IMG/VR virus record: IMGVR_UViG_3300025162_000016
Location: 186,001 to 250,000 of that record
Strand: one strand, 5' to 3'
DNA length: 64,000 bases
A model generated the notes under the pieces. The model ran no database searches. It was not told the origin of the DNA and worked only from the letters and a program-made list of their open reading frames with translations. A program made the translations under genes and the position numbers. Shown one piece after another: positions 1,729 to 62,295 of this stretch (its first letter is position 1; every line of letters begins with the position of its first letter).

Positions 1729-2032
1729 TATCAACCGCCTTGCCCGTAAGTGGAGTTCCAATTTTTTTTATCTCACCGTTCCCTTGCATGCGATAAACAT
1801 ATAAAGTAATTATTTTTTCTAAGTATGAGGAGCCATCGTTTTGATCTATGAGTGCGGAAAATAATTTTGGATTTTTAAAATTCCCTCGAACTGTTCCTTT
1901 TGATGCATAAATAATGGGATCTCCCCAATCGGAATCATATAATACTGCGTCCTTTCCAAGGAATACTAAATTAAACATAGTTCCATGAATGAAATCTTTT
2001 TTGGATGGATTTAATACTCGTTCTTTAAGCAT
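1709..2032 (-). CDS. hypothetical protein
   Basis: Start re-placed at MLKERV (2032), 3 nt after TATTTATA box. Confidence 0.6.
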   Translation of the reverse strand: MLKERVLNPSKKDFIHGTMFNLVFLGKDAVLYDSDWGDPIIYASKGTVRGNFKNPKLFSALIDQNDGSSYLEKIITLYVYRMQGNGEIKKIGTPLTGKAVDIKVPNY

Positions 2033-2072
2033 GTCTATAAATAGAATAAAATGAACAAAAAACATATAAAAG

Positions 2073-2101
2073 TTGACGTTTTAATGTAAATGTGATATAG
2101 T
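2073..2101 (+). promoter_or_regulatory. sigma70-type promoter
   Basis: TTGACG-17nt-TATAGT with TG extended -10. Confidence 0.75.
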
Positions 2102-2134
2102 TAGTAAATATGAACCAAATACAAAATATACAAT

Positions 2135-2305
2135 ATGGGGAGAACATTTAGAAAAAATGATTTTAGGCGTCCTAAAAAGGACAGGTCCGGTAATAAGAGT
2201 CGTAAACTTCGAGAGTACGAGGGAGAAAAGTTTAAATTTAGACCTCCGTCTAATCAAGATTCATTAGAAGTTCCAGAACCACCGGAATTTTCGGATGAAC
2301 CGTAA
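2135..2305 (+). CDS. small hypothetical protein (56 aa, not in ORF track)
   Basis: MGRTFRKNDFRRPKK...FSDEP*; fills gap between promoter and ORF 2308. Confidence 0.6.
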   Translation: MGRTFRKNDFRRPKKDRSGNKSRKLREYEGEKFKFRPPSNQDSLEVPEPPEFSDEP

Positions 2306-2307
2306 AT

Positions 2308-2595
2308 ATGGTTGTTGAATTATTTCTTACTATTAGTTTTATATCTATCATGGTTGTAGGTTATCTTCTGTGGGCATATCAACAGCGGTTTGAAAATTTA
2401 GTGGGGGATCATACTGCTTTGAAAGCAAAGGTTCGAGAGGGTGAACGTGCCATTGTAGAGAATTTTGGAATTATTGGAAAAAAGTTTACAAAGTTAGAAC
2501 ATGAAATCAAAGACGCAAAGAGAATCACTACCGGTAAAACCAAAGAAGCCGTTAAAGCCGCTACGCAACTCGAACGACGTAGAGAACTCAGCTAA
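2308..2595 (+). CDS. membrane-anchored coiled-coil protein
   Basis: N-terminal hydrophobic helix followed by charged helical region. Confidence 0.6.
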   Translation: MVVELFLTISFISIMVVGYLLWAYQQRFENLVGDHTALKAKVREGERAIVENFGIIGKKFTKLEHEIKDAKRITTGKTKEAVKAATQLERRRELS

Positions 2596-3046
2596 ACTCT
2601 CGTTGTTTGATCATGTGAAACATATTCGGGGTGTTCAAGCCCCGGATTATTTCAATAACCTTTCCGAAGAAAACCAGAAATCCTTTAATCATTTCATGCT
2701 TCTTCGGGCATTATCAATGGATGATGATTGTGTGGGTGAAATGGCCTTCTTATATCGTTATTTTGATAGAATACCTTCGCCACAATTTTATACTCTTTTA
2801 ATTTCATTGACCCCGAAAAACAATAGATGGGTTCCTTGGATTAAAACCAAAATTATTAAACATAGTCCAGATTTATTAAATCTGGTGTCTAAAAAGTTTG
2901 AAATCTCAAAAAGACAGGCCAATGAATATGTAAATGTGCTAGTTGCTACTAATGAAGGGTTAGAACAATTGGTTGGTTTATGTCAAGCAATGGGTCTGAA
3001 TGATAACGAAGTAGAACAGTTATTTAACAAAAAGGATTATAAGTGA
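2501..3046 (+). CDS. clamp loader small subunit, T4 gp62-like
   Basis: LFDH...SFNHFM..RALSM...FY..L...PK..RW..WIK pattern of gp62-like proteins. Confidence 0.65.
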   Translation: MKSKTQRESLPVKPKKPLKPLRNSNDVENSAKLSLFDHVKHIRGVQAPDYFNNLSEENQKSFNHFMLLRALSMDDDCVGEMAFLYRYFDRIPSPQFYTLLISLTPKNNRWVPWIKTKIIKHSPDLLNLVSKKFEISKRQANEYVNVLVATNEGLEQLVGLCQAMGLNDNEVEQLFNKKDYK

Positions 3047-3979: not shown

Positions 3980-3980
3980 A

Positions 3981-4409
3981 TTAATTTAGAAGCTTATGGA
4001 CAATACCAAAAAGGATAAGTCCTCCGAAAAAGGCTATAGGAAATATAATCAGATGCCCCGTCCATAATGTTAGACCAATACATAACCATACGGTTACACA
4101 TATTGGACAAGTGATGAGTCGGGTGAAAAAATTGTTATGATATTGACGAAGATATCCGTGATAAGTTAAAGTGACATCATCTTTCTTTTTTTCGTAATAA
4201 TCTTTATAATTAGATAAGAAATTAAGATGAAAAACTTGGCAATATTCTACGAATGCTTCTGTCCGGAAAAATATTAGTAATACAAATGCCAAAAGACAAG
4301 AACTATTTATAATAGTAAATATCATAGAGTTTTTAAGAAATTTGTCCCAATCATTTTCACAGATATATTTCACAATAATTAATGATATGCTGAATAGAAA
4401 AATATTCAT
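3981..4409 (-). CDS. membrane protein, DUF1360-like
   Basis: Hydrophobic helices and LITCPICVTVW motif; start may be at 4325. Confidence 0.55.
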   Translation of the reverse strand: MNIFLFSISLIIVKYICENDWDKFLKNSMIFTIINSSCLLAFVLLIFFRTEAFVEYCQVFHLNFLSNYKDYYEKKKDDVTLTYHGYLRQYHNNFFTRLITCPICVTVWLCIGLTLWTGHLIIFPIAFFGGLILFGIVHKLLN

Positions 4410-4415
4410 TAATCA

Positions 4416-4600
4416 TAAATAGTTTCAGTTATATCATGAACTACCCACCCGCTAAAGCAAGTGGGTTTCCCCGCTTGATTAGTTTCTGAGTTTCGTGGTT
4501 CACAGACTTGATTACTCTCTCTGTTTTACCAGATACCATCCTCGACGCCTCCCCACGTTTTTGTTTATCGTGCGATTTGATTCCCAAACCACACAAACCT
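4416..4600 (-). ncRNA. predicted TnpB omegaRNA (scaffold to 4436, then guide GATATAACTGAAACTATTTA)
   Basis: Known TnpB architecture: RNA overlaps the gene 3' end and right end; 5' boundary approximate. Confidence 0.6.
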
Positions 4601-5799
4601 TGTTTTAATATATTCAGGGACGCATTATAGTCCCTATCGTGATGAATGTTACAAATAGGACAATCCCATTCTCTATCACCCTTCTTTAATGATTGGTTTA
4701 TGTATCCACAATCATTACAGGTTTTAGAAGATGGAAACCATCTATCCACTTGGATGAACTTCCTATCGTTCCATTCACTCTTATATTTGAGTTGTCTAAC
4801 AATCTCATACCAAGATACTTCTTGTATTGACCTTGCTCTCCTATGGTCTTTCATCATATTGATTATACTTAAATCTTCCATACAGATTATTGCGTTGTTT
4901 TTGACAATATCATTAGTAAGTTTATGAGTATAATCCATTTTTACATTAGTTATCTTTTCGTATGTTTTTGCTAACTTAACTCTTGCTCGTTCTCTATTCT
5001 CACCTTTCTTTGTTTTCTTGGAATGCTGTCTTTGTTGGTATTCCAGTTTCTTTCGATATTTCTTTGCTATTCTTGGATTGGAAATCTTTTTACCATCGGA
5101 GAAAGTCATCAGGTCAATCAATCCTAAATCAATACCTACACTTTTATTTGTCTCCTTGACTTTAAGTGTGAAATCTTCCTCAACAATGAATGATACAAAA
5201 TACTTGTTAGTTTTGGTTTTGGAAATGGTGAGGAAACAAATCTCATAGTTTTCTCCAAATGGTCTATGTTGGTTTACCTTAATTGCTTTCAATTTAGGAA
5301 TAGTCAATAGTCCATTCTCAAAAGTAAAATGTTGAGGAATACAGAATGATTGTTTATCGTATTTGGATTTGAAAGATGGGAAGGACGCAATCTTTTTGAA
5401 GAACCTTTGGTATGCTACATCAAGTTGTCGTAATGATTGTTGGAGAGATTGACTATTGACTTCGTTCAACCATTCAGTATCTTTATCCTCTTTCAATGCC
5501 ACAAGAAGTTTAGCCGTATCGTTGTATCCTATTCCTTTTCCATTTTTGAGGTAATGGTCTTTTCGGGCATTAAGAAAGTAATTAAAGACGAAACGGGAAC
5601 AGCCAAAGGATTTAGCAAAGAAGGTCTTTTGTTCTTCGGTTGGAAGAACTGGAAACTTATATCCTCTGGTTATTCTTTTTGTTGTCATCAAGTATAAGTA
5701 TATCGAAGATTTACAAAAAGTTATTTTATTTGTAAATATCTTCATTTTCAATGGGTCGCATTCATCCCATCCCCTAAAGGAGATGGGTTTTATGCTCCC
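4436..5799 (-). mobile_element. non-autonomous IS200/IS605 (IS1341-like) element, TnpB only
   Basis: Subterminal hairpins CCCATCTCCTTTAGGGGATGGG (left end) and CCCACTTGCTTTAGCGGGTGGG-TAGTTCAT (right end); left boundary uncertain by 1-2 nt. Confidence 0.85.
4441..5688 (-). CDS. tnpB: TnpB RNA-guided endonuclease
   Basis: RuvC D/E/D (GIDLG, MEDL, DRDYNA), CNDC/CPIC zinc ribbon; start re-placed at MTTKR. Confidence 0.95.
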   Translation of the reverse strand: MTTKRITRGYKFPVLPTEEQKTFFAKSFGCSRFVFNYFLNARKDHYLKNGKGIGYNDTAKLLVALKEDKDTEWLNEVNSQSLQQSLRQLDVAYQRFFKKIASFPSFKSKYDKQSFCIPQHFTFENGLLTIPKLKAIKVNQHRPFGENYEICFLTISKTKTNKYFVSFIVEEDFTLKVKETNKSVGIDLGLIDLMTFSDGKKISNPRIAKKYRKKLEYQQRQHSKKTKKGENRERARVKLAKTYEKITNVKMDYTHKLTNDIVKNNAIICMEDLSIINMMKDHRRARSIQEVSWYEIVRQLKYKSEWNDRKFIQVDRWFPSSKTCNDCGYINQSLKKGDREWDCPICNIHHDRDYNASLNILKQGLCGLGIKSHDKQKRGEASRMVSGKTERVIKSVNHETQKLIKRGNPLALAGG

Positions 5800-7845: not shown

Positions 7846-7859
7846 AAATTTTCTTTATA

Positions 7860-8759
7860 TCATTTGGGAAGGTTAAACAATCTACCAACCCATTTGAGTA
7901 AAAGCTCTCTTTCTAGATTTAATCTATCGTTAAACATATTGCATCTGTATCCGGTATAATCTCTTACAATATTATAATCTTTAAGAGGACTAGTGTTGTG
8001 ATGTCCTTTGAGTATGTTTGTTACATGGTATTGTGGAATTTTATGATATAATCTAGACCATTGGAGGCAATAATCATCGTGTCCTATTAACAAATCTGGA
8101 CAGTATAAATTATCCGGCATTTGGTCCGATAAGACGGATGCGGGGGATTCGATTGTATTTAATGGTTGTCCGGGTACTACAAAAGGTATAGTTATAATGG
8201 TTGGGTCTCCCCATTTTTCATTAAATGCGTAAAGTGTTTCCAATGAAATTGGATCTGCGAATCGCATAAATCCATCTTTTATATCTTCGTTTTTTATGTT
8301 TTGAATAGAACAATGTTCTATTGGTTCCCATCCTCCCCACATTTTTCTGGCGGCAAATGTTAAAATATATGGGCGAGTTTTACATTGTTTGTCAAATGTT
8401 TCCGATATATAAAAATATTCCAATGGAAGTAAACAATCTGCGTCTCCCCAATAATTGAGTCCATTTTTTATTGAAAACTCTCGTTTAACGCAAGGGGGTC
8501 CAAAAATCGGATCTTTGTCTGTTATATGAACAATCTCACAGTGTTTAACAAAGGGATGACTCATGAAATGAATCCATTGTTCTTCCGGATCATTGATCGG
8601 AGTGTCCATGTAATTTTTTGTTTGTCCGTTTAGAATTAGAATAAATTCGGTAGGGGCGGTTGAATATTTATATGCATTTTCTATAGACGTTAAAGTTTCA
8701 TTAACTACTTTTACGTCTTTCCAAGAAATTTGCATTGTAAATCTATTTTTATTTATCAT
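7860..8759 (-). CDS. putative GT-A glycosyltransferase
   Basis: WGDAD DxD-like motif, GHDD; cluster context. Confidence 0.55.
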   Translation of the reverse strand: MINKNRFTMQISWKDVKVVNETLTSIENAYKYSTAPTEFILILNGQTKNYMDTPINDPEEQWIHFMSHPFVKHCEIVHITDKDPIFGPPCVKREFSIKNGLNYWGDADCLLPLEYFYISETFDKQCKTRPYILTFAARKMWGGWEPIEHCSIQNIKNEDIKDGFMRFADPISLETLYAFNEKWGDPTIITIPFVVPGQPLNTIESPASVLSDQMPDNLYCPDLLIGHDDYCLQWSRLYHKIPQYHVTNILKGHHNTSPLKDYNIVRDYTGYRCNMFNDRLNLERELLLKWVGRLFNLPK

Positions 8760-11208
8760 GAAGTTGTCTTTGTAGTTTGATTTTAGTCATTTGTAAAATG
8801 TTATCCACTGCCGCTTGTCCGAATTTTTCTTTTATTCTAATTAAAAATTTAGGATTTGTATGATACGTTAAAAAGGCGTCATCTCGGAATTTCAATACTT
8901 CTTTATTACTCAAATGGTTGGTATGCATTGGAAACGTTTCATATGCATGAAAGGAAAATCCCAAATAGTCGGTTGGCATCGCATCTCCTTTATCCAGTGC
9001 TTCTTTATAGATTTGGCTTCCCGGTAATGGCATCACTGCATACGCATTCCATCCACGGGTGGCAAGCTCAAGGCTCAAATCCAATGTAGCTTTCATGCTT
9101 TCATAATCATCCCCTATATGTCCGAAAAGATAGTTTCCCAAGACTTCAATATCTGCTTCCTCTATCTTTTTTACTACATCCCGAATATCGACATCTAAGA
9201 ATTTTCCTTTAGAAATTTCCAGACGAATTTTTTGGCTTCCGCTTTCAATTCCGAGACATAACCATCGGAATCCCGCTTTACGAAGAAGTTTCAAAACGCC
9301 GGGGTCTTTGGATACAGTATCGATACGTGAATATGCCCATAAAAGGAGGTCTTTACTGTATTCTTTTTTGGCAAGTCCTTCACAGATAGGCACATAGTAT
9401 TTAGAATTGAGTAAAAACATTTCGTCGCATAAGCGAATAGTGCTAACTCCCATCTCATGGAGTTTATCAAACTGTTTCAATATAAATTCCGGAGACCAAT
9501 ACCGCATACCTTTGTAGTTTGATGCTACACCGATAGGGTCATTATCGTTTCGGTTGATGATATTAATCATGCAATTATGGGTCAAAACGTTGTTTGCATA
9601 AAAATTATTATGAGGTTCGCATTGTAAATTAAACGTTTCAGTATTTTCGTCTATAACTTTTATATCTTCAATTCTAACATAATGGGGGCAGTTTATAGCC
9701 TTTTCTAACATTATTTTTGTATATCTTTTACCCCCAAAACCTCTATCAAAATTAGTTTTTGAGTGACAACTGGCACAAAGAGTTATAAGATTTGAAGTTT
9801 GATTATTATACTTATTATAATCAATGTGGTGAACATCCAATTTTCCGGTCGTTTTTTTACATTCCTGACATGTATTATTATCACGTATTTTAACGGATTT
9901 TCTCACTCGTCTGTTTTTGCTTAGATAATATGGTTTAAATTTTACACATTTTCCACCGTCCCATTTGGGATTTTTTTCTTTTAAAAATCGTTCACTTGCT
10001 TTATCTTGATTTTTTCGTGAATACATCGGATTAGCATCAGATAACATTTTTTCTCGGGCCATTTTAGATGCCATTTCTCGTCCTTTTTCTGTACAAAGAT
10101 GTGGAATTGTTTTACCCGTAATGAATCGTTCTTTGCTTGTTTTGGAAGTTTTAGACCGGGTTTCATTGACAAACATGGGATTATAATGCTTCATTCTGAA
10201 TATATTTTTGTCGTTTGCATCAACTACAAGTATTTTATCTCCTATTTTAAGATTTTCTGCGTTTACCCACGTTCCATCGTTATAAAATGGATGCTCTCCG
10301 GTACATTTCACGATTTTATTATCGGTTAGTTTAATATGATATATTTTTTCGGAACGTAGATTGTTAGACACTATTACAACGGTTTCAGAAATTTCCAATT
10401 TATTTTCATCCCATGCTAAGAGTTTATCTCCGATTTTTACATCTTCGATTTTTTTATTCTTATCATGTGAAAGAGTTATTTTCGTGCCCGCAGATAAACA
10501 GAAATTACACCCAAATTTGCATCCAAATGATGAAAATAATGTAGCATAGGGTGTTCGGAGGTTAGCATCGTAGTTAGCGTGCCACATGGGAGCCCTATAA
10601 AGATCAAAGGGTTTTTCTTTCTTTGGTAACAAGTCCCACGCATAGCCGGGAAGATCAATGTCCATTCGTTCTTGAGGCACAATCTTTCCAGGTGCCGTTA
10701 AAAAAGGCTTTCCGTCTTTTCGAAATCCAATTCCGTTAATTTGTCCCAAGGTTGACGGGTCCGTTGTCGCTTGAATACCGGCGAGTGCCCACAATGCATA
10801 GACGCCTTCGTTAGTTAGAACAATATCAATGCTCGGCTCGTCTTGCAGAGCTTTGATGGGAAGAGCCTGCATATAGGAACCTACGAATATGTTCGGGATT
10901 TTGCAATCACTAGATTTGAGATATTTAGACAATTGTGTCGCCCCATACATACTCACTGTTCCGGCATTTACGTTTTGTCCATAGACAACGAAGCATAACC
11001 ATTTGGGATTTAGTTCTTTGATCCTTTGAAGTCCCTGTTCGTGAGATTGGTTCTCCGCATTCATGTCAAGAATGCCAACCTCATGTCCTACGGAACGACA
11101 CGACTCGGCAAGTAGTAAACCCCAAGTGGGTGGTTCAATAGAAGAATAGGTTGTTTTCAGTTCTTGATAAACCCGGTCATTTGATGGTATTACAAATAAG
11201 ATGTCCAT
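8749..11208 (-). CDS. cobalamin-binding radical SAM enzyme (class B methylase-like) with intein
   Basis: N-terminal B12-binding domain; CKFGCNF|C after splicing gives CxxxCxxC; DEMF, GIESG; start re-placed at MDILFV. Confidence 0.9.
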   Translation of the reverse strand: MDILFVIPSNDRVYQELKTTYSSIEPPTWGLLLAESCRSVGHEVGILDMNAENQSHEQGLQRIKELNPKWLCFVVYGQNVNAGTVSMYGATQLSKYLKSSDCKIPNIFVGSYMQALPIKALQDEPSIDIVLTNEGVYALWALAGIQATTDPSTLGQINGIGFRKDGKPFLTAPGKIVPQERMDIDLPGYAWDLLPKKEKPFDLYRAPMWHANYDANLRTPYATLFSSFGCKFGCNFCLSAGTKITLSHDKNKKIEDVKIGDKLLAWDENKLEISETVVIVSNNLRSEKIYHIKLTDNKIVKCTGEHPFYNDGTWVNAENLKIGDKILVVDANDKNIFRMKHYNPMFVNETRSKTSKTSKERFITGKTIPHLCTEKGREMASKMAREKMLSDANPMYSRKNQDKASERFLKEKNPKWDGGKCVKFKPYYLSKNRRVRKSVKIRDNNTCQECKKTTGKLDVHHIDYNKYNNQTSNLITLCASCHSKTNFDRGFGGKRYTKIMLEKAINCPHYVRIEDIKVIDENTETFNLQCEPHNNFYANNVLTHNCMINIINRNDNDPIGVASNYKGMRYWSPEFILKQFDKLHEMGVSTIRLCDEMFLLNSKYYVPICEGLAKKEYSKDLLLWAYSRIDTVSKDPGVLKLLRKAGFRWLCLGIESGSQKIRLEISKGKFLDVDIRDVVKKIEEADIEVLGNYLFGHIGDDYESMKATLDLSLELATRGWNAYAVMPLPGSQIYKEALDKGDAMPTDYLGFSFHAYETFPMHTNHLSNKEVLKFRDDAFLTYHTNPKFLIRIKEKFGQAAVDNILQMTKIKLQRQLHDK
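9574..10500 (-). mobile_element. intein with HNH homing endonuclease (309 aa)
   Basis: Starts CLSAGT, block B CTGEHPF, ends VLTHN|C; HNH core TCQEC..VHHID..N...NLITLC..CH. Confidence 0.92.
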
Positions 11209-11209
11209 G

Positions 11210-24886: not shown

Positions 24887-25573
24887 TTATTTTGTTTTTT
24901 GCCCGAACACGGTATGTCCACGATTTTCATCAATCGTAAACCATTCATTATATCGAATATTTGTTTTTAATTGAGTTGCCATGGTTTTTTCGTGATATAA
25001 TGCCAAATTAAAATCAAATGGCAATGTGGTAAAGGAAGCGTGCCCTTCTATTTTCTCATGCAGTCGTCGTTCCCAATGAATTCGAGATGGATCGTTTTTA
25101 TAAATGCGTCCTTGAAAATCAGGAGCATTTACTATGGGTCTGTTATCACATTCTGGACATGGAGTAAGTCTCCACCCCCATGTTTTAGCATCTTGAATTG
25201 TTACTCCAATATAATCATTAATTCGGCTAACAAAAATCAATTCAATTGTTGGATTTAACTCAATAATGGATTTGATATTAATAATTAGATTTGGATTTGG
25301 TATCTCATCCCCGTCAATTTGAAATATCCATGGATTTTTACATTGCTCGTTTCCAAAATTTTTATGTTGGGAATAATTACGATCAAGTTTGTGCGGAATT
25401 AATTGTATAGAATCTTTCCATTTATTGAAAATTTCTATTGTATTCGGATTATCAGAGAAATCATCTAATATAATAACTTCATCTTCTATATCTTTATGAG
25501 CAATAACATTGGTTAAACACTTATCTAAAGTATCACTTTCATTGTGTGATGTTATTAAATAACTTATTTTCAT
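24887..25573 (-). CDS. GT2 glycosyltransferase (KdtX/LgtF-like)
   Basis: ISYLITSHNE, DDFSD, QIDGDE, PDFQGR, LHE. Confidence 0.88.
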   Translation of the reverse strand: MKISYLITSHNESDTLDKCLTNVIAHKDIEDEVIILDDFSDNPNTIEIFNKWKDSIQLIPHKLDRNYSQHKNFGNEQCKNPWIFQIDGDEIPNPNLIINIKSIIELNPTIELIFVSRINDYIGVTIQDAKTWGWRLTPCPECDNRPIVNAPDFQGRIYKNDPSRIHWERRLHEKIEGHASFTTLPFDFNLALYHEKTMATQLKTNIRYNEWFTIDENRGHTVFGQKTK

Positions 25574-29717: not shown

Positions 29718-29838
29718 GAAACATATGGTAACTCTATTTTAGCATATTTACAAGATATTATAACGCAAACTCGTCATTTTGTTACGGTAATTACTGTCAT
29801 AGGAACAAGTTGTCCATCGCTATAAATAAACCAGTATG

Positions 29839-33545: not shown

Positions 33546-33606
33546 GACAATAAATAGTGTTTACATTTGTAAAATCATTTTTATTTTTGTAAAATCTTAT
33601 TTATAT

Positions 33607-36080: not shown

Positions 36081-36728
36081 GTTGCTATGCGGGGATATTC
36101 TGATATTGTGGGAAGATATGGAAATATTAGAATCGACGGATTGTGGAAAACATGATGTTAAAAACATTAAATTTTCACGAGTTTGGGCAATGCCGAACTC
36201 TGATACGTTTAAAGTCAAGCCCATTGGCGAGTTTGTTAAAAAATATCTTGACAAATCGAAAGTAAGTGTAGATTCTTTTGCTCGGAATAATTCATGGTGT
36301 TCCTATACGAATGATATTAATCCTACCACAATTGCCCAATATCATTTAGATGCGGAAGCATTTCATTTGGAATTAGTTAAAAAGGAGATTAAATGTGATT
36401 TATGGGTGTTTGATCCGCCATACTCTCCACGGCAATTAAAAGAATGTTACAATAGTTTTGGCAGAAAAATGCAATTGGAGGATGGACAAACGGCAAGACT
36501 TCGTAAAATATGGAAAGCCACTATGGTTCCGGTGTTAGCATTGGATGCGGTGGTTTTATCTTTTGGATGGAACACGGTTGGAATGGGTAAGAAATTGGGG
36601 TTATCAACTGATGGATTAAATGTTACAATTCTTACAAAATTCTAAAATAATTTATAACTTCAACACAATAAATAATAAAATATTTACTTTTTTATGATTT
36701 TCTACTTTTTACTTTATACTTATATCAT

Positions 36729-41814: not shown

Positions 41815-42561
41815 ATGCAGAAAAATTTATTGGAAAATTTCATAAAACGATATAGCCTTGGAGGTATATGTGAATGTGCTCATTGGTATAGTGATGCCGA
41901 AAAGAAAACTCTTACTGCCCGAGCCCACACCGACGAGAAAACCGTTATTTTAAAAATCATTTTAAAAAAATGGGAGGGAATGGAAACTTGTCAAATGGCA
42001 TTGCCAAGTTCCACTAAAATTAAAGCAATGCTTAATCCGATTGGAGATGAGGTAGTGGTTACTCTAAATAAAATTAGAGATAGAATTGCCAATTTTACCG
42101 TGGCAGATGTTGATTGTGAAGCGACTTGCACGGTGGCTGAATATGATGCGTTTCCCGAAACCCTGGATACTGATACCGCCGAAATTCCCTTGGAATTTGA
42201 TGTTGAAGTGAAGTTTACTGAGGAGTTTGTCAATAGATTAATGAAATCAATTGCGGCTTTGACTGAAGCTAAAGATTTTGTTCTGATGAACAATAAAAAG
42301 GGAAAGTTGGATATGGTCATCAATTATGAGGATACTAATACGAATCGTATACGTATTCCGGTAGAGACCATTAACGGTAAAGATAAAATTGATACTCCGA
42401 CCGCATTATCAACAGCGGTATTAAAAGCGATTATCAATTCAAATGATAAAGCGGACGGCGCTGTTTTAAAAGTTTCCAGCCGTGGTATTGGAGTTATAAA
42501 TTTTGAAGATGAGACTTTTAAATCGACCTATTTTCTATTTTCACCACGAGTAATTGAATAA
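41815..42561 (+). CDS. DNA sliding clamp (gp45/PCNA-like)
   Basis: About 250 aa, two-domain alpha/beta pattern, between polB and clamp loader. Confidence 0.75.
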   Translation: MQKNLLENFIKRYSLGGICECAHWYSDAEKKTLTARAHTDEKTVILKIILKKWEGMETCQMALPSSTKIKAMLNPIGDEVVVTLNKIRDRIANFTVADVDCEATCTVAEYDAFPETLDTDTAEIPLEFDVEVKFTEEFVNRLMKSIAALTEAKDFVLMNNKKGKLDMVINYEDTNTNRIRIPVETINGKDKIDTPTALSTAVLKAIINSNDKADGAVLKVSSRGIGVINFEDETFKSTYFLFSPRVIE

Positions 42562-42568: not shown

Positions 42569-43516
42569 ATGAACGAACCTCTAATTAAAGAACGTCGGAC
42601 AATCCAATATATTTGGACAGAAAAATACAGGCCAAAATCATTGGATACATTTATTGGTAATGATTCCGTGAAGAAAAAGATTCGAGGATTCATTGATCAA
42701 AAAGATCTACCGCACCTGCTTTTCCACGGAACCGCAGGAACTGGTAAAACCTCGTTGGCAAAGATGATTGTTAAATGTATTCCCTGTGATCATATTTATA
42801 TTAATGCATCGGACGAACGAACCATTGACACTATTCGTGATAAAATTGTTGGATTTGCGTCTACGGTATCGTTTGAGCCACTAAGAATTATCATTCTGGA
42901 TGAGGCGGATTTTTTACCCGCATTGTCGCAGGGGGCACTCCGTAATGTAATGGAAACTTATTCTATTCATTCCAGATTTATTCTAACTTGTAATTATATT
43001 GAACGTATTACTCAGCCAATTGTTTCTCGTTGCGGTGGAGGAATTAAAGTTGAACCATTATCAATGGAAGCAGTTGCCGAACATTTGTCTCTTATTCTTG
43101 AGACTGAGAAGATTAAATATACTATAGAGGATATTGGGTTTATTGTAAAAAGTTATTATCCGGATGTTCGTAAAATTATCAATTTTGCCCAACAAAATAC
43201 GGAAAAGGGTAAATTAGCGATAGCGGTTGAGAATTGTATTGAAACAGACTATCTGGAACAATTATTAACATTACTTAAAACGCCAAAGAAAGCGGGAGTG
43301 TTTGGACAAATTCGCCAGTTGGTTGCAGATGCTCAATTTTCTAATTATGACGAGGTTTATCGATATCTTTTTGATAAAGTAAATGAATTCGCCAAAGACA
43401 AAGAGCCGCAGGTTATTCTCGAATTGGCGGATGCTGTTTATCAGTCCGCCTTAGTGTTCGAAAAAGAAATAACGTTCGTTGCAATGATTCAGAAGATACT
43501 TAAATGTCTGGTTTAA
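42569..43516 (+). CDS. clamp loader AAA+ subunit (gp44/RFC small)
   Basis: WTEKYRP, GTAGTGKT, NASD, LDEAD, SRC. Confidence 0.95.
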   Translation: MNEPLIKERRTIQYIWTEKYRPKSLDTFIGNDSVKKKIRGFIDQKDLPHLLFHGTAGTGKTSLAKMIVKCIPCDHIYINASDERTIDTIRDKIVGFASTVSFEPLRIIILDEADFLPALSQGALRNVMETYSIHSRFILTCNYIERITQPIVSRCGGGIKVEPLSMEAVAEHLSLILETEKIKYTIEDIGFIVKSYYPDVRKIINFAQQNTEKGKLAIAVENCIETDYLEQLLTLLKTPKKAGVFGQIRQLVADAQFSNYDEVYRYLFDKVNEFAKDKEPQVILELADAVYQSALVFEKEITFVAMIQKILKCLV

Positions 43517-48060: not shown

Positions 48061-48071
48061 TATTTATACGT

Positions 48072-48701: not shown

Positions 48702-48730
48702 TTGACCATCGGTGCATAATACGATATATT
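48702..48730 (+). promoter_or_regulatory. sigma70 promoter, probably leaderless
   Basis: TTGACC-17nt-TATATT, ATG 6 nt downstream. Confidence 0.6.
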
Positions 48731-48736
48731 GCGGTA

Positions 48737-51335: not shown

Positions 51336-51469
51336 CATTTTTCTATAAAATGTTTGCTCTTTTCTGATACTATGTTAGAATTGTTACACGGATAAGTTCA
51401 TATGGATTTAATAGTTGGGTTATATCATTTCTAATCGCTTTTTGTCATGTGAATAGATATTTATATGAC

Positions 51470-53885: not shown

Positions 53886-53933
53886 TTAGTGAGTAAATTG
53901 AAATTTTAATGAAATGCAAATATATTTATATCT

Positions 53934-54676: not shown

Positions 54677-54715
54677 GCGCTATAATGACTTCATAATGTT
54701 GTTATGGCGTTTTTT
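54677..54715 (+). terminator. probable intrinsic terminator
   Basis: GCGCTATAATGAC/GTTGTTATGGCGT stem with G-U pairs, then T-run. Confidence 0.55.
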
Positions 54716-54750
54716 CTGCCTAGTTATAAAGAACGGATACACATACAAAT

Positions 54751-56686: not shown

Positions 56687-56697
56687 TTTTACGTTTT

Positions 56698-57072: not shown

Positions 57073-57838
57073 TATCAGTGGTTCTATAGTTGAGCAATTT
57101 GGATTACGTAGTCCAGTTGATACTTCAATGAAGGGCGATGAACGAGTTATTGCTGTTTTAGCTAAAAAGGTGGATGATTTAGCTAAAGAACTGTATGAAG
57201 TAAAAAAGGAGAAGCTATTAAAAGAAACACATCTACCCCTCGAAGTATTAGAACACTTAGGATTGCCACCTAATCCTCCTACTCCACTTAAACGAGGCAG
57301 GGGATATCGTCCTTTGATGGCGCATGAAATTATTGAAGCTAAAGCTATTATCCGAGGGAAAAAAGGATTTGTTAATGAAGCAATGGTAGCTCGTTATTTA
57401 AGGATATCTTTCATCACGTATAAAAAATATGCGAGACGTTATAATTTATGGGAGCCCAATCCAAATCTAAAAGGAAAAAAAGGACTTTATGATCCAGAAA
57501 GAGGTCGCTATCCTTTAAGTGAAATTTTATTAGGAAAATATCCTGAGTATCCGGTATTCAGAGTAAAAGATAAACTTATTCGAAGTAAAATAAAAGAACC
57601 CAAATGTGAACTTTGCGGTTTTCATGAAAAAAGAATACTCGATGGAAAAATACCCCTACTTTTAAATTTCATGGATGGGAATGAAAAAAATCATGCGTTG
57701 GAGAATATGAAATTATATTGTCTTAATTGCACTTTCACCAGTGGTAGAGGTTACATTCGGAGTGGTCAACATTATTTCGATACAGATTGGTTGCAAGACG
57801 GAAAAAAAAGTTCAGCGGAGGAATCAAATCGATGGTGA
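57047..57838 (+). CDS. HTH plus degenerate HNH zinc-finger protein
   Basis: VARYLRIS..TYKKY; CELC...DGN..N..LEN...CLNC without the catalytic His. Confidence 0.6.
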   Translation: MSENLLTPDISGSIVEQFGLRSPVDTSMKGDERVIAVLAKKVDDLAKELYEVKKEKLLKETHLPLEVLEHLGLPPNPPTPLKRGRGYRPLMAHEIIEAKAIIRGKKGFVNEAMVARYLRISFITYKKYARRYNLWEPNPNLKGKKGLYDPERGRYPLSEILLGKYPEYPVFRVKDKLIRSKIKEPKCELCGFHEKRILDGKIPLLLNFMDGNEKNHALENMKLYCLNCTFTSGRGYIRSGQHYFDTDWLQDGKKSSAEESNRW

Positions 57839-57850
57839 TATTTATAATAT

Positions 57851-58297
57851 ATGAAAGACCAACCAATGCATATTCTTACACAAGAAGGAATTCTTTCTTC
57901 GTTTTCGATCTCTCAAAAGTTGACGGAGAAAGAAGTGAACGTTCTTCTTTCAAAGGCCAAACGTAAATGTAAAAATAAAGAGAATCCATTGGATATTGTT
58001 CAAAACAATGTTTTGGAAGAGATCGTGAATGCTACCAAAAATGGAACCCTTCCCGGTATTATTGTAGACGAAAAAGAAGAAGAACCATTACTTCCCATCA
58101 AATCCATTGATTTCCTCAATCATATGGTAATGGTTATTTCTCAGAAATTTAAAAATAAAAAATTAGATAAATTATCTCTTTGCTATTTTATAAATTTCTT
58201 GGTGGGTAATCTTAACTTATCCGAAGAAGATTTTGAAGACTTTCATCGCCGTGTTCAAGAAGCTAAAGGGGGCGATGATAATGATGATTACGAATAA
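57851..58297 (+). CDS. hypothetical protein
   Basis: TATTTATA box 4 nt upstream. Confidence 0.65.
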   Translation: MKDQPMHILTQEGILSSFSISQKLTEKEVNVLLSKAKRKCKNKENPLDIVQNNVLEEIVNATKNGTLPGIIVDEKEEEPLLPIKSIDFLNHMVMVISQKFKNKKLDKLSLCYFINFLVGNLNLSEEDFEDFHRRVQEAKGGDDNDDYE

Positions 58298-58345
58298 AAT
58301 AACTTGATTGTTTTTAAAAATTGTGTTATTTTTTAGCAAAATTAT

Positions 58346-59404
58346 ATGAGTAACAACATTGCTGTCATAACTGGTGCCGGGGGAATGGACGCAAAGACAT
58401 TAACCCATTTTTTGTTAAATAAAGGATATAAAGTAATTTTAACATATAGAAGGAATTCGTTTTTTGATGTCCAACACATTAAATCATTATTTAAAACAGA
58501 TTTAGAAGAAAATTTTAATTCTCAGTTAGAATGTGAGGTTTGTGATGTTTCTTGTCAAAATAGTGTTATAGAATGTATTAAAGAAATTATTAAAAAACAT
58601 GGTAGAATAGATGAGTTATATCATTTAGCGGCAATGACTCATGTTGGAAATAGTTTTAAACAAAAGGAACTATCAATTATAGTTAATGGACAAAGTCATT
58701 ATTATTTTTTGGAAGCTCTTAAAAATAATAGTCCAACTACAAAATTTTATGGGGCAATGACGAGTGAGTTAGTAGGTGGAGTGAATCAAATAGCATATGA
58801 TGAAGATATGAAATGGAATCCCAAGTCCCCATATGCTATTGGAAAAGCATTAGGGGCAAGATGGATAGAATTCTATAAAGAATCGGAAGATAGTCATCTG
58901 TTTTGTTGCTATGGTATTCTTAGCAATCACTCGAATACATATCGAAGTTTAGATTTTGCTGTTCGCAAAATAACAAATACGGCTGCAAGAATTTTTCTCG
59001 GCAAATCTTCCCAACTACAACTGGCACATTTAAATTGGGCAAGAGATGAACATTGGAGTGATTTTGGGTGTGAAATGATGTGGAAAATGTTGCAGTTAAA
59101 ATCACCGGAAAATTTTGTAATAGGAAACGGCGAATGCCATTGGGGCGAAGAATATGTAGAAGAAGCGTTTTCTTATTTTAATCTTGATTGGAAAACGTAT
59201 GTAAAGTTTGATACTAATTTAAACAGACCGAATGAAGTTGTTAAATTGGTTTCTAATAGTAATAAAGCCAAAGAAATGTTAGGATGGAAATCAAATAGAT
59301 TAACATTTAAAAAACATATTGAATTACTTTGTAAATTTGACTATGATCTGGAATCTGGAAATGTCCCGGTTCGCCCTGATGTTTTTGAATTATATCCAGA
59401 ATGA
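58346..59404 (+). CDS. gmd: GDP-mannose 4,6-dehydratase
   Basis: ITG..G.D, HLAAMTHV..SF, TSEL, PKSPYA.GK, RKIT, RP.EV. Confidence 0.88.
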   Translation: MSNNIAVITGAGGMDAKTLTHFLLNKGYKVILTYRRNSFFDVQHIKSLFKTDLEENFNSQLECEVCDVSCQNSVIECIKEIIKKHGRIDELYHLAAMTHVGNSFKQKELSIIVNGQSHYYFLEALKNNSPTTKFYGAMTSELVGGVNQIAYDEDMKWNPKSPYAIGKALGARWIEFYKESEDSHLFCCYGILSNHSNTYRSLDFAVRKITNTAARIFLGKSSQLQLAHLNWARDEHWSDFGCEMMWKMLQLKSPENFVIGNGECHWGEEYVEEAFSYFNLDWKTYVKFDTNLNRPNEVVKLVSNSNKAKEMLGWKSNRLTFKKHIELLCKFDYDLESGNVPVRPDVFELYPE

Positions 59405-59423
59405 ATTAATTCATATTTCTTAG

Positions 59424-60745
59424 AGGAAGGAAACCCCAACGGCTTTAGCCTTGGGGAGGAATTCCGACCACTTCCAATATCCTACTATAGTTTAATCCTA
59501 ATGTCAATAAATTCTTTCAGTGTATGAAAATATTTGATGTTTTGAGATTTTTGAACCATACTTATATTGGATGAGTAAATTAACTTACAACACAAGAATA
59601 ATCTTTGAGAATCAACTCGACAATAATAAAATTGTTGCAATGATGGATTCTCAACTATTTGCATGGAACGAGTGTTCTAAAATTAAATTCTCATCAGTAA
59701 CTAAAAATTCCATTGTCGAACTGCATTCTAAATTCTATAAATCTTTCCGAGAGAATAACCCCGATATTCCATCTCAAGTTGTAATTTCTGCCGAACAATC
59801 AGTTCTATCTTCTTACCGATCAATTAAATCAAATAAACATAAAATTAAAACTGCCATTGTTAAGAAAAATCCATCTATTCGATTAGATAAAAGAACATAT
59901 TCCTATAAAAATGGAGTTTTTAGTATAATTTCACTAGAAAAAAGAGTTAAATGTAAACCATTCTTATTTCCAAAACTACAAGAATTAATATCTAAATATT
60001 CTTTTTGCGATCCATTATTATTTATACGAAAAGATGAAGTCTGGATTTCTCTTACTTTTAACATTCCCGTTTTATTACCCACCAAGATACTAGCCATTGG
60101 AGTTGATTTAGGTTGCATAAATTTAGCAGCAACTAGCGAAGGTAAATTATATAAAGATAAATCGTTTAACGCTAGAAAACGACAGTTGAGACATTTAAAA
60201 TCATCATTAAAATCCAAAGGTACTAAATCCTCTCGTAAACATTTAATTAAATTACATCACAAAGAACATAATATAAATAAAAATTTATCGCATCATTTAG
60301 CAAATATAATCATTAAAGATACCACTGCGGATGTGATTGTCCTAGAAAACTTAAAGTCATTAAAAGTAAAAAAACATAAGTATCAGAATAAAAATAGAAT
60401 TTCTCAAGTTCCTATGTTTGAATTGAGAAGAATACTTACCTATAAGGCACTCCTGTCTAATAAACAGGTGATAACAGTTAGTCCATCGTTCACTTCGCAA
60501 ATTGACCATAGAACCGGAAAATTGGATGGTCAAAGAATTGGTGGTAGGTATATCGGAAAAGATGGTCAGATATTACATGCGGATATAAATGCTGCATGTA
60601 ATATAGGATTACGTTCCAAACACCCATGCTCAATAAGAAATTATTATGTATGGCAGGCGACAGTCAATTCGCCAATCGTATGTAAATCTTCTGCTAGTAG
60701 AGAAGTATTACAAGCCCCTATCCCTTTAGGGTAGGGGTTGTTGAC
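59424..60745 (+). mobile_element. non-autonomous IS200/IS605 element inserted after TTAG
   Basis: Left-end hairpin CCCCAACGGCTTTAGCCTTGGGG; right-end hairpin CCCCTATCCCTTTAGGGTAGGGG-TTGTTGAC; removal restores a stop for the HNH gene. Confidence 0.9.
59571..60734 (+). CDS. tnpB: TnpB RNA-guided endonuclease lacking zinc-ribbon cysteines
   Basis: GVDLG, VLENL, HADINAA; TSQIDHRTG replaces CxxC. Confidence 0.92.
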   Translation: MSKLTYNTRIIFENQLDNNKIVAMMDSQLFAWNECSKIKFSSVTKNSIVELHSKFYKSFRENNPDIPSQVVISAEQSVLSSYRSIKSNKHKIKTAIVKKNPSIRLDKRTYSYKNGVFSIISLEKRVKCKPFLFPKLQELISKYSFCDPLLFIRKDEVWISLTFNIPVLLPTKILAIGVDLGCINLAATSEGKLYKDKSFNARKRQLRHLKSSLKSKGTKSSRKHLIKLHHKEHNINKNLSHHLANIIIKDTTADVIVLENLKSLKVKKHKYQNKNRISQVPMFELRRILTYKALLSNKQVITVSPSFTSQIDHRTGKLDGQRIGGRYIGKDGQILHADINAACNIGLRSKHPCSIRNYYVWQATVNSPIVCKSSASREVLQAPIPLG

Positions 60746-60765
60746 TCCTCTATTTTGAGAAATAA
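60640..60765 (+). ncRNA. predicted TnpB omegaRNA (scaffold to 60745, guide TCCTCTATTTTGAGAAATAA)
   Basis: Overlaps tnpB 3' end and right-end hairpin; 5' boundary approximate. Confidence 0.6.
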
Positions 60766-61374
60766 ATTCCAATCTATATGTTTTGCTTCGTGAATTAGTT
60801 TATATCGAGGAATTGGGTTTGGTTTTTCCGGTAACCTAATTAATTTCAAACCGGCTTCTTCCGGTGTTTTGTTAGACTTAATTGTATTGAGATTTTTATC
60901 AGAACAAACGAGATTTTCCCACGAATTATCTCCTCCACGAGATTTTGGACGAACATGATCAATAGAAATCTGATCCTTTTTTAACTTGCGGCCCGTATAT
61001 TGACACCGATTGCCATCTCGAATACGAATTTGTTCAGTGGAAGGATTTTTACCAAATTTCACCTCGGGCACCTTGCCATAATTTTTTACAATTAAAATCG
61101 TCGGAATTCTGATTTCCATGCGAATTGTCTTAATTGAAAAATCCCATTCCCGAATCGGTAGCGTAATCCATTCTTCCCATTCCACTGGTCGAATTTGTAA
61201 TGGTTGACTAAAATCAACCAATCCCTCCTCGCTTATAACATAATCAATATCTAATGCATAACTGTTTTTCCCACCCGCAAGATCCACCAGTGCCTTCCCA
61301 ACATTAAATTGATCTATTACCTGCCAATGCCTATTTAATTTTAAACAAAGTAATTTATTTTCTATTCCCTTCAT
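60718..61374 (-). CDS. HNH endonuclease (McrA-like)
   Basis: RD...CQY, IDHVRPKSRGG..SWENLV, N..K..KTPEEA. Confidence 0.9.
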   Translation of the reverse strand: MKGIENKLLCLKLNRHWQVIDQFNVGKALVDLAGGKNSYALDIDYVISEEGLVDFSQPLQIRPVEWEEWITLPIREWDFSIKTIRMEIRIPTILIVKNYGKVPEVKFGKNPSTEQIRIRDGNRCQYTGRKLKKDQISIDHVRPKSRGGDNSWENLVCSDKNLNTIKSNKTPEEAGLKLIRLPEKPNPIPRYKLIHEAKHIDWNLFLKIEESTTPTLKG

Positions 61375-61437
61375 AAATCATAAATATACGGAAAAAACTC
61401 AAGAGATTGTTTGTAGTTTTTTATATTTATATGAAAT

Positions 61438-61710
61438 ATGATTAAACTCAAAGATATTCTAGGTGGAAATGTTGACTCGATTAAATGGATAGTTGGTATC
61501 GTGGATAATTATGGAAAAATTCATCACAAGGTAGTGCAACTGAACGATCCTATTGATAGTCATAACCAAATTTGGCCGCTTGCTCATCATGGAAAATGGA
61601 GATGGATGCCAAGTAAACCAACTCAAATGAACACATACAACGAACAATTAGATGAAGATGCTATCGATGCTATTTGGCAGCTTATTGATCGTTATAGATT
61701 ATTTTTATAA
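61438..61710 (+). CDS. hypothetical protein
   Basis: MIKLKDIL N-terminus; TATTTATA box 6 nt upstream. Confidence 0.65.
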   Translation: MIKLKDILGGNVDSIKWIVGIVDNYGKIHHKVVQLNDPIDSHNQIWPLAHHGKWRWMPSKPTQMNTYNEQLDEDAIDAIWQLIDRYRLFL

Positions 61711-61714
61711 TTTT

Positions 61715-62272
61715 TCACCACAAATTATCGATTAATCCCCATTCTTTAGCTTGATTAGCATCGAAATAGCGATCTCCTACTTTTTCACATTGCGATTTCC
61801 AAAATGTCTTGGATTTTTTTGTATGATTCTCCATTAAGCTGTTCCAACGTTCCTCAACTTCTCCAAAATGAGCGAGATCATTTTTAACCTCATCCATTTT
61901 TCCACCAATATCCCCGTAGCTTTGATGAACCATAAAATATGTGTTTGGAGTAGCATAACGATGTCCTTTTTTTCCACAGGCGACTAATAACGGCGCTGCT
62001 GACATACATTTCCCCATTGCTATGGTATATATTGGAGCTTTGCATTTCTGTATAGTGTCGTAAAGTGCAAACATGTCATATTGACATCCCCCATAAGAGC
62101 CAACAAAAAGTTCAATTGGGCTCTTAGATGATTCTGTTTCCATCAGATATATCGCCTTAACCACTAATCCGATTGGCATATTTTCTACATCGTCAAATAA
62201 AAATACTCTACGGTTATTGCGATCAACGCCGTGAGAAAATAAAATATCGGTCCAATCTATAGTTGTTTTCAT
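61715..62272 (-). CDS. clpP: ClpP-family protease subunit
   Basis: S.GG, GKCMSAA (Ser), MVHQ (His), DRYF.A.QA.EWGLID. Confidence 0.92.
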   Translation of the reverse strand: MKTTIDWTDILFSHGVDRNNRRVFLFDDVENMPIGLVVKAIYLMETESSKSPIELFVGSYGGCQYDMFALYDTIQKCKAPIYTIAMGKCMSAAPLLVACGKKGHRYATPNTYFMVHQSYGDIGGKMDEVKNDLAHFGEVEERWNSLMENHTKKSKTFWKSQCEKVGDRYFDANQAKEWGLIDNLW

Positions 62273-62295
62273 GACTATAAATAGAATAGATATTT

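What the first reader, a model, noticed from the sequence alone, without database searches (positions are those of the whole stretch)
2030..62283. TA(T/C)TTAT(A) box 3-4 nt before start codons: candidate phage promoter giving leaderless mRNA
Seen: the octamer lies 3-4 nt upstream of the start codon at 2036(-), 4414(-), 5693(-), 29821(-, only a 6-codon ORF follows), 33549(-), 35320(+), 36717(+), 48061(+), 51458(+), 53923(+), 57839(+), 59559(+), 61379(-) and 62276(-), and 6 nt upstream at 61424(+). It marks first genes of runs rather than internal genes. Known: T4 late promoters are a lone TATAAATA -10 box read by gp55; this motif is its reverse complement. Inference: a phage-sigma late promoter whose start site falls at or next to the ATG. 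It also corrects several ORF starts.
Basis: partly seen in the sequence, partly recalled or inferred. Interest (0 to 1): 0.65.

Follow-up and report, generated by a model that had tools for sequence, protein, structure and literature searches.

The report
Leaderless late promoter box, jumbo phage
The TATTTATA box is a real promoter element shared by a whole branch of distant T4-like phages, where it precedes capsid and tail genes. In this 369-kb freshwater phage it often sits so close to the start codon that the messages should have no leader.

Summary
All 15 sites exist as described. Genome-wide, TAYTTAT followed by 4-5 nt and an ATG opening a long ORF occurs 26 times, against 2.3±1.6 in shuffles. 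In the window the count is 10 against 0.5. Single-base variants and the reverse orientation show no such peak.

The window lies in a 368,758-bp T4-superfamily myovirus from fresh water, with a Gp23 capsid protein, a tail sheath, PolB, a sliding clamp and no Shine-Dalgarno signal.

The box is a clade-wide promoter. It is conserved upstream of the tail-sheath gene in most of 30 relatives. It also precedes tail genes in cultured Flavobacterium phage immuto and Microcystis phage Mel-JY01, and the capsid operon here. It is kept before orthologous genes while the flanks diverge.

In relatives the box-to-ATG spacing is bimodal, at 4-6 nt or 17-42 nt. A conserved purine lies 4 nt after the 7-mer, exactly where the A of ATG falls in the close class. 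This implies leaderless mRNA.

A second class of sigma70-like promoters (38 sites) is also leaderless. No start-site data exist, so this stays inference.

The parts
2036..2043 (-). Box TATTTATA, 3 nt, ATG at 2032 (107-aa gene 1709-2032); head of a divergent pair
4414..4421 (-). Box TATTTATG, 4 nt, ATG at 4409 (142-aa ORF 3981-4409), just downstream of a TnpB element's terminal hairpin
5693..5700 (-). Box TACTTATA, 4 nt, ATG at 5688 (TnpB/OrfB_IS605, 415 aa, 4441-5688)
29821..29828 (-). Box TATTTATA, 3 nt, ATG of a 6-codon ORF; not conserved in L010; doubtful site
33549..33556 (-). Box TATTTATT, 3 nt, ATG at 33545 (58-aa ORF); the region is absent from L010
35320..35327 (+). Box TATTTATT, 3 nt, GTG at 35331 (FecR-like, 249 aa); divergent head. 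The box is kept before the orthologue in L010, L011 and L013; L012 has TATAAT plus 7 nt instead
36717..36724 (+). Box TACTTATA, 4 nt, ATG at 36729 (52-aa ORF followed by TnpB 36888-38120)
48061..48068 (+). Box TATTTATA, 3 nt, ATG at 48072 (206 aa). Box and 4-nt spacing (from the 7-mer) are conserved in L011, L012 and L013 while the flanks diverge; internal position (gap 11 nt)
51458..51465 (+). Box TATTTATA, 4 nt, ATG at 51470 (398 aa, DUF5661); box conserved in L011 with a 7-nt spacer
53923..53930 (+). Box TATTTATA, 3 nt, ATG at 53934 (235 aa); box conserved in L011 with a 6-nt spacer
54721..54728 (+). Leadered variant box TAGTTATA, 22 nt before ATG 54751 and just after a terminator-like hairpin (54677-54710). 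The L011 orthologue has TACTTATA at the same place.
57839..57846 (+). Box TATTTATA, 4 nt, ATG at 57851 (148 aa); internal position (gap 12 nt)
59559..59566 (+). Box TACTTATA, 4 nt, ATG at 59571 (TnpB-like, 387 aa). The RNA-library contig starts at 59578 and none extends upstream
61379..61386 (-). Box TATTTATG, 4 nt, ATG at 61374 (HNH endonuclease, 218 aa); box conserved before the orthologue in L160
61424..61431 (+). Box TATTTATA, 6 nt, ATG at 61438 (90 aa); divergent partner of 61379
62276..62283 (-). Box TATTTATA, 3 nt, ATG at 62272 (ClpP-like/prohead protease, 185 aa); not conserved in L160
41815..42561 (+). Sliding-clamp gene (248 aa) between PolB (38745-41396) and a clamp-loader AAA+ gene (42569-43516); a possible co-activator of late transcription by analogy with T4 gp45

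Best explanation
(A/C)TAYTTAT(A) is the -10-like core of a promoter class shared by a deep branch of T4-superfamily myoviruses. It has no -35 hexamer, only a weak T-run about 8-11 nt upstream of the box. It drives capsid and tail genes, so it is most likely the late promoter.

The most likely reader is host RNA polymerase core carrying a phage-encoded, highly diverged gp55-like sigma. This is a 292-aa protein at genome 24,254-25,132, outside the window.

Transcription probably starts at a purine 4-5 nt after the 7-mer. In this jumbo phage and its close relatives, about 35 copies are placed so that this purine is the A of the start codon, usually with T at -1. These produce leaderless mRNAs or mRNAs with a leader of at most 2 nt. 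That fits a genome in which no Shine-Dalgarno signal is used.

Shown here: the motif, its positional and orientation specificity, its conservation, its association with late genes, the sigma-like fold, and its co-occurrence with the box. Inferred: the start site, the identity of the factor that reads the box, the timing, and any role for the sliding clamp.
For: - Positional enrichment: 26 observed against 2.3 in shuffles. The spacing histogram is sharp and one-base variants are flat. Sense orientation outnumbers antisense 51 to 23.
- No SD: upstream regions are A-rich and G-poor. SD-like 4-mers occur before 35 of 448 starts, against 48 of 448 at a control position inside genes.
- Orthologous conservation with diverged flanks, in relatives of 30-44% GC, for the genes at 35331, 48072, 51470, 53934, 54751 and 61374.
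- The box is conserved 35-60 nt upstream of the tail-sheath gene in about 25 of 30 relatives. It also lies before tail sheath, tail tube, baseplate and tape-measure genes of Flavobacterium phage immuto and Microcystis phage Mel-JY01. It lies about 130 nt before the operon that holds the Gp23 capsid gene and before this phage's own tail sheath and tail protein genes.
- In 0.9 Mb of relatives the box-to-ATG spacing is bimodal, at 4-6 nt and 17-42 nt. The reverse-complement control is flat. A variable distance excludes a fixed translational role.
- In 144 non-redundant boxes the position 4 nt after the 7-mer is A in 67% and a purine in 82%. This coincides with the A of ATG in the close class.
- 4 of 34 box sites follow a terminator-like hairpin within 80 nt, against 11 of 448 for all genes.
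- Independent support for leaderless design: 38 sigma70-like promoters (TTGACn, 16-17 nt, TAnnnT) lie 4-9 nt before an ATG. One also precedes a tRNA cluster.
- Among 50,697 phage records its homologues occur only in immuto, Mel-JY01 and one uncultured 484-kb phage. TATTTATA is the only upstream motif that immuto and Mel-JY01 share.
- No phage RNA polymerase or canonical sigma was found by Pfam.
- A sliding clamp is present.
Against: - There are no transcript 5' ends. The only RNA run found covers just one TnpB gene, as contigs.
- With T4's geometry (box at -13 to -6; PMC7892883) the start would fall 1-2 nt inside or after the ATG. A shorter discriminator must therefore be assumed.
- About 270 of 377 copies of the 7-mer lie inside coding sequence, so the core alone cannot define a promoter.
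- Sites 29821 and 62276 are not conserved.
- No gp33 homologue or clamp-binding tail was identified.
- Box genes in the window include transposases and endonucleases, so 'late' is not shown for them.
Confidence: 0.62

Rival explanations
1. The box is a promoter, but a host sigma factor (primary or alternative) reads it without any phage-encoded specificity factor. The 292-aa sigma-like protein would then serve another promoter class or another role.
For: The box sits where the -10 element of the sigma70-like class sits relative to the ATG. The phage clearly uses sigma70-type promoters elsewhere. The link between the sigma candidate and the box is only co-occurrence.
Against: The same box is used by phages of a Flavobacterium and of a Microcystis, and the primary sigmas of those hosts recognise different elements (my own knowledge, not tested here). 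The box lacks the TAnnnT register and a -35 element. TATTTATA is the only upstream motif shared by the phages that share the sigma candidate.
Confidence: 0.15
2. A phage-encoded, non-canonical RNA polymerase that went undetected here recognises the box, as in phiKZ/AR9-type or crAss-type phages.
For: The genome is jumbo-sized. Large proteins of 2,375, 1,003 and 860 aa have no family match. phiKZ-group early promoters are AT-rich boxes with a start site 6 nt downstream (PMC5312081).
Against: There is no match to Rpb2_6, Rpb1_2 or T7-type RNA polymerase models. The phage belongs to the T4 superfamily (Gp23, tail sheath), which uses host polymerase. Its 160-190 kb cultured relatives carry the same box.
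Confidence: 0.08
3. The box acts at the RNA level as a translation-initiation signal that replaces Shine-Dalgarno, for example as an AU-rich ribosome or S1 binding site at -12 to -5.
For: It occupies the place of an SD sequence in a genome without SD. The spacing to the ATG is tight.
Against: In the same genome and in relatives the box also lies 17-130 nt upstream of starts, most often at 17-42 nt. It is enriched at run heads and divergent regions rather than at tightly packed genes. It follows terminators. Only about 8% of genes have it.
Confidence: 0.05
4. The pattern is a chance product of AT-rich intergenic DNA.
For: The 8-mer count alone is only about 1.75 times the shuffled expectation in the window. 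One or two listed sites look like chance (29821).
Against: The shuffle test gives 26 against 2.3, with a maximum of 9. One-base variants are flat. There is an orientation bias. The box is conserved in relatives of up to 44% GC.
Confidence: 0.01

Closest known systems
T4 late promoters (TATAAATA at -13 to -6), read by gp55 with gp33 and the gp45 sliding clamp
   Same: Both are a lone 8-bp -10-like box without a -35 element, placed before capsid and tail genes of a T4-superfamily phage. Read in the same orientation, 6 of 8 positions agree. These include the adenines at the places gp55 buries in deep pockets (-12 and -8 in T4; PMC7892883). A gp55-like fold and a sliding clamp are encoded.
   Different: The two central bases are TT instead of AA. 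In silico consensus sequences reported for other T4-related phages are highly similar to T4's or differ at -13/-12 (PMC2988020). The inferred start is about 2 nt closer to the box. The sigma candidate is 292 aa, with a Lys-rich N-terminus and an extra C-terminal helical domain, and it has no significant sequence similarity to gp55. No gp33 or clamp-binding tail was found. Many copies abut the start codon.
Bacterial sigma70 promoters that give leaderless mRNAs (for example lambda cI from PRM, or many actinobacterial genes)
   Same: A -10 element lies 5-7 nt before an AUG, so that +1 is the A. AUG is strongly preferred: 31 of 33 box sites use ATG. This genome's own sigma70-like class has the same layout.
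   Different: Here two promoter classes give at least 70 such genes in one phage genome. The box class has no -35 hexamer and no TAnnnT register.
Bacteroidota promoters (TTTG at -33, TAnnTTTG at -7)
   Same: Both begin with TA, are T-rich, and have an upstream T-run or TTTG. Both go with genes that lack SD sequences.
   Different: The box ends in TAT(A), not TTTG. The upstream TTTG, where present, lies about 12-14 nt from the box by eye rather than about 19 nt (my recollection of the literature, not checked). The box is also used by a cyanophage.
phiKZ/AR9 virion-polymerase early promoters
   Same: Both are AT-rich conserved boxes with a start site a fixed few nt downstream, in jumbo phages.
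   Different: Those need phage multisubunit polymerases, which were not detected here. AR9 and phiKZ transcripts have 5' UTRs of at least 26 nt, and none is leaderless.

Membership tests
T4-type late promoter system | 8-bp -10-like element with consensus TATAAATA on the non-template strand | tested here: not met
   The consensus is (A/C)TAYTTAT(A). TATAAATA in the gene-ward orientation shows no positional enrichment. 6 of 8 positions agree.
T4-type late promoter system | No conserved -35 element | tested here: met
   There is only a weak T-run at -18 to -15 from the box (information content 0.3-0.6 bit) in 33 own sites, and it is weaker still in 144 sites from relatives.
T4-type late promoter system | Precedes virion (late) genes | tested here: met
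   Tail sheath across about 25 of 30 relatives. Tail genes of immuto and Mel-JY01. This phage's own tail sheath, tail proteins and Gp23 operon. Timing was not measured.
T4-type late promoter system | Phage encodes a gp55-family sigma (sigma region 2 homologue) | tested here: inconclusive
T4-type late promoter system | Activation by a sliding clamp through gp33 and C-terminal clamp-binding motifs | not testable with these tools
   A clamp gene is present (41815-42561). No gp33 homologue or clamp-binding tail was recognised.
Leaderless mRNA | Primary 5' end within 0-2 nt of the start codon | not testable with these tools
   Only contigs of one RNA run were available, and they cover one TnpB gene. 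Indirect support comes from the conserved purine 4 nt after the 7-mer.
Leaderless mRNA | AUG start and no SD | tested here: met
   31 of 33 box sites use ATG. There is no SD enrichment in the genome.
Sigma70 -35/-10 promoter | TTGACA-like hexamer, 16-18 nt, then TAnnnT | tested here: not met
   Not met for the box class. It is met by a separate class of 38 sites, mostly at 250-340 kb.
phiKZ-type phage-polymerase promoter | Phage-encoded multisubunit RNA polymerase | tested here: not met
   No PF00562 or PF00623 match, with the controls positive. Very divergent polymerases could escape these models.

The most novel reading that the evidence does not exclude
A deep, mostly uncultured branch of the T4 superfamily may have re-tuned the gp55 late-transcription system to a new box (TATTTATA), with an enlarged sigma that nobody has annotated. 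Homologues of the sigma candidate number 1,329, and hosts span at least Bacteroidota and Cyanobacteria.

Its jumbo members would then have moved both promoter classes up against the start codons. Under this reading, the genes at more than 70 promoter sites are expressed as true leaderless mRNAs in an SD-free setting. The promoter's +1 purine and the initiation codon would be the same nucleotide.
Probability: 0.4. Interest if true: 0.72.

Novelty: new variant of a known kind. Interest (0 to 1): 0.6.

Why it matters
The box gives a simple, testable rule for finding late promoters and true start codons in a large group of environmental phages. That group includes jumbo phages and cultured Flavobacterium and Microcystis phages, whose regulatory signals are undescribed.

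It also points to an unannotated core gene as the likely late sigma. This offers a natural specificity variant (TT instead of AA in the centre of the box) for studying how gp55-type sigmas read DNA.

If the leaderless layout is confirmed, this would be an unusually extensive use of leaderless translation by a phage. That bears on how ribosomes of hosts without Shine-Dalgarno use select start codons.

Tried and rejected
- **Giant eukaryotic virus.** I first suspected one, because of PolB, inteins and many glycosyltransferases. I rejected this: there is no NCLDV capsid match, though that model had no positive control. The genome has T4 Gp23, a tail sheath and baseplate genes.
- **DNA search of the phage collection.** It found nothing.
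- **Direct searches of the genome.** Searches for Sigma70_r2, Sigma70_r4_2, gp55 PHROGs (phrog_234, phrog_12791), RNA polymerase beta and beta', and T7-type polymerase all gave no hit. The sigma candidate was reached only indirectly, through Flavobacterium phage immuto.
- **Sequence-level links of the candidate to known proteins.** A PDB profile search, PHROGs, BLASTP and hhalign against gp55 were all non-significant.
- **Host identification through a TnpB gene.** This gave only a 46% match in a Neisseriaceae MAG contig, which is uninformative. The host remains unknown. One PolB homologue is labelled Bacteroidales, and the only RNA run that shares words with the stretch is a freshwater metatranscriptome.
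- **RNA evidence.** One freshwater metatranscriptome shares 6% of the sampled words. When laid on 57401-63400, it covers only the TnpB gene at 59578-60740 at 96-98% identity. It therefore says nothing about start sites.
- **Whole-record search of relatives L011-L013.** This was not possible.
- **Generic sigma70 and terminator scans of the window.** They were at or near background.
- **The idea that TACTTATA boxes are copies of IS ends.** Rejected: the regions upstream of the TnpB genes share nothing but the box.
- **Complex prediction.** No job was run.
Full report
**What the window is.** The window is bases 186,001-250,000 of a 368,758-bp IMG/VR virus record. The record has 7,102-bp direct terminal repeats and 35.8% GC.

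The window carries a family-B DNA polymerase, many glycosyltransferase and sugar-nucleotide genes (three of them interrupted by inteins), three TnpB/IS605-type genes, an SNF2-type helicase and a ClpP-like protease. I first considered a giant eukaryotic virus. The genome instead encodes a T4 Gp23-type major capsid protein (Pfam E 5e-58), a T4-type tail sheath, a baseplate wedge and tail proteins. It is therefore a jumbo member of the T4 superfamily.

The closest cultured relatives by tail sheath are Microcystis phage Mel-JY01 and Flavobacterium phage vB_FspM_immuto, at 41-45% identity. The only RNA run that shares words with the stretch is a freshwater metatranscriptome. The host is unknown.

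**The observation.** All 15 sites are as described. The bare 8-mer is only modestly over-represented: 28 against 16±4. Its position is what carries the signal.

- Of 377 TAYTTATN 8-mers in the genome, 26 lie 3-4 nt before an ATG that opens a long ORF, against about one at any other spacing.
- Shuffling the 30 nt upstream of all 2,305 candidate ATGs gives 2.3±1.6 (maximum 9) against 26 observed. For the window it gives 0.5±0.7 against 10.
- Every one-base variant other than TACTTAT is flat.
- In one-directional intergenic regions the sense orientation outnumbers the antisense 51 to 23 (p 0.0015).
- An alignment of 33 sites gives (A/C)TAYTTAT(A), with a weak T-run at -18 to -15 from the box start and no -35 hexamer.
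- The sites favour divergent regions and gapped positions, but six sit at tightly packed internal genes.

**The genome has no Shine-Dalgarno signal.** Upstream of 448 predicted starts the sequence is A-rich and G-poor, with T at -1 in half of the genes. SD-like 4-mers are no more common there than inside genes, 35 against 48.

**A second leaderless promoter class.** K-mer enrichment upstream of starts revealed TTGAC(T/A)TT. Thirty-eight sites have TTGACn, then 16-17 nt, then TAnnnT, followed by an ATG 4-9 nt later. Other distances are almost empty. Most of these sites lie at 250-340 kb, and one precedes a tRNA cluster.

Placing the start codon at the expected +1 of a promoter is therefore a general design of this genome. 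The TATTTAT box sits where the -10 hexamer of that class sits.

**The box is a promoter, not a translation signal.** In this genome it also occurs at greater distances from starts:
- 8-37 nt before large genes, including the tail sheath and a tail protein;
- about 130 nt before the operon that holds the capsid gene.

Across relatives:
- In about 25 of 30 tail-sheath loci (41-76% identity, 31-45% GC), TATTTAT(A) lies 35-60 nt upstream of the sheath ATG.
- In cultured immuto and Mel-JY01 it precedes tail sheath, tail tube or completion, baseplate hub and tape-measure genes.
- It is among the most enriched upstream 8-mers in immuto (22 genes) and is also enriched in Mel-JY01.
- Over 0.9 Mb of relatives the spacing to the next long ORF is bimodal, at 4-6 nt and 17-42 nt. 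The reverse complement is flat.

Four of 34 close-spaced sites follow a terminator-like hairpin, against 11 of 448 genes overall.

**Conservation of window sites.**
- In four relatives with PolB 71-76% identical, the box persists before orthologues of the genes at 35331, 48072, 51470 and 53934 although the flanks have diverged. In L012 the 35331 orthologue has TATAAT plus 7 nt instead.
- A leadered TAGTTATA at 54721 corresponds to TACTTATA in L011.
- The 61379 box is kept in L160.
- 29821 and 62276 are not conserved.

**Where transcription starts.** In 144 non-redundant boxes from relatives, most of them leadered, the position 4 nt after the 7-mer is A in 67% and a purine in 82%. This is the signature of a +1 nucleotide. 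It is exactly the place of the A of ATG when the spacer is 4 nt. With a 5-nt spacer the base before the ATG is usually T (by eye). That gives the pyrimidine(-1)/purine(+1) pair which, to my knowledge, bacterial polymerase prefers. This supports leaderless or near-leaderless transcripts but does not prove them.

The only RNA data are contigs from one freshwater metatranscriptome. They cover a TnpB gene from 59578, which is 7 nt inside the ORF, to 60740, and nothing else in 57401-63400.

**Who reads the box.**
- Pfam models found no canonical sigma or phage RNA polymerase, and PHROG models found no gp55, in this genome.
- The gp55 PHROG gave a weak hit (E 0.008) to a hypothetical protein of immuto. 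That protein has a clear homologue in this genome (E 6.8e-38): 292 aa, at genome 24,254-25,132.
- The homologue is a strongly conserved core gene with 1,329 homologues, no Pfam domain and only 'hypothetical' labels.
- Sequence-level similarity to gp55 is not significant, although hhalign aligns the expected segments.
- Among 50,697 phage records, homologues occur only in immuto, Mel-JY01 and one uncultured 484-kb phage. immuto and Mel-JY01 carry the box, and their hosts belong to different phyla. That argues for phage-encoded specificity.
- The gene after PolB folds as a sliding clamp. The model has low confidence, but all top hits are PCNA or beta clamps (E about 2e-5). It is followed by a clamp-loader gene.

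**Comparison with T4.** T4's box TATAAATA spans -13 to -6. gp55 flips out the adenines at -12, -9 and -8 (PMC7892883). In the same orientation TATTTATA agrees at 6 of 8 positions, including the two deep-pocket adenines, and differs at the two central bases.

In silico consensus sequences reported for other T4-related phages are highly similar to T4's or differ only at -13/-12 (PMC2988020). I found no paper describing TATTTATA as a phage late promoter. The inferred start is about 2 nt closer to the box than in T4. AR9 and phiKZ transcripts, by contrast, have leaders of at least 26 nt.

**Verdict.** The box is a conserved promoter of a T4-related clade, most likely its late promoter read by a diverged gp55-like sigma. 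In this jumbo phage it, and a second promoter class, are positioned to give leaderless mRNAs. The start site, the timing and the factor remain to be shown experimentally. I rate it a new variant of a known kind.

Noticed in passing
G000:C1 about 250,000-340,000; a window candidate at 48702-48736: A second promoter class: TTGAC(T/A)TT, 16-17 nt, (cgg)TAnnnT, then an ATG 4-9 nt later. There are 38 sites, mostly before small ORFs and so probably early genes. One also precedes the tRNA cluster at 286,137.
   Followed up: partly
G000:C1:24254-25132 (L138:1354-2232): An unannotated 292-aa core protein with a sigma-factor fold, whose best match is T4 gp55. The next gene (127 aa, acidic) has its own leaderless box at 25209 and follows a terminator-like hairpin. 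It could be a co-activator.
   Followed up: partly
G000:C1 about 337,900-349,800: A dense array of about 25 small paralogous genes. Their upstream regions consist of tandem GGTCACAAGTT-like decamers, followed by either ACAACTAGAATTAC-ATG or TATAAATGAACT...-ATG.
   Followed up: no
window 8749-11208, 25539-28148, 29839-32481 (all - strand): Inteins (Hint/HNH or LAGLIDADG) interrupt a B12-binding radical SAM protein and two further genes, one of them a group-1 glycosyltransferase. Relative L010 lacks the two inteins at 25539-28148 and 29839-32481, but its PolB match is split into three pieces, which suggests insertions there.
   Followed up: partly
window 4441-5688(-), 36888-38120(+), 59571-60734(+); hairpin near 4425-4460: Three TnpB/IS605-family genes, each preceded by the C variant of the box (TACTTATA). 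In a freshwater RNA library, contigs 96-98% identical cover 59578-60740, and several contigs share only 60711-60741 before running into different flanks. This looks like an element end found in several genomic contexts.
   Followed up: partly
window 4441-35265 (- strand): A run of about 30 kb and about 30 genes for sugar-nucleotide and glycan synthesis (DegT aminotransferase, UDP-glucose dehydrogenase, transketolase-like, several glycosyltransferases). Only three boxes lie at its edges (5693, 29821, 33549) and none between 5,700 and 29,800.
   Followed up: no
G000:C1:91282-93000: The Gp23-type capsid gene matches the Pfam model in two pieces, with a gap of about 160 codons between them. This is possibly an insertion domain. 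The search reported one TAA within the matched span. The gene has one of the few SD-like leaders (GAGGAG).
   Followed up: no
Flavobacterium phage immuto (MW353176): Besides TATTTATA, a second enriched upstream motif (TATATTTAGGTATCAATAATTAA) is present. It may be another promoter class of that phage.
   Followed up: no
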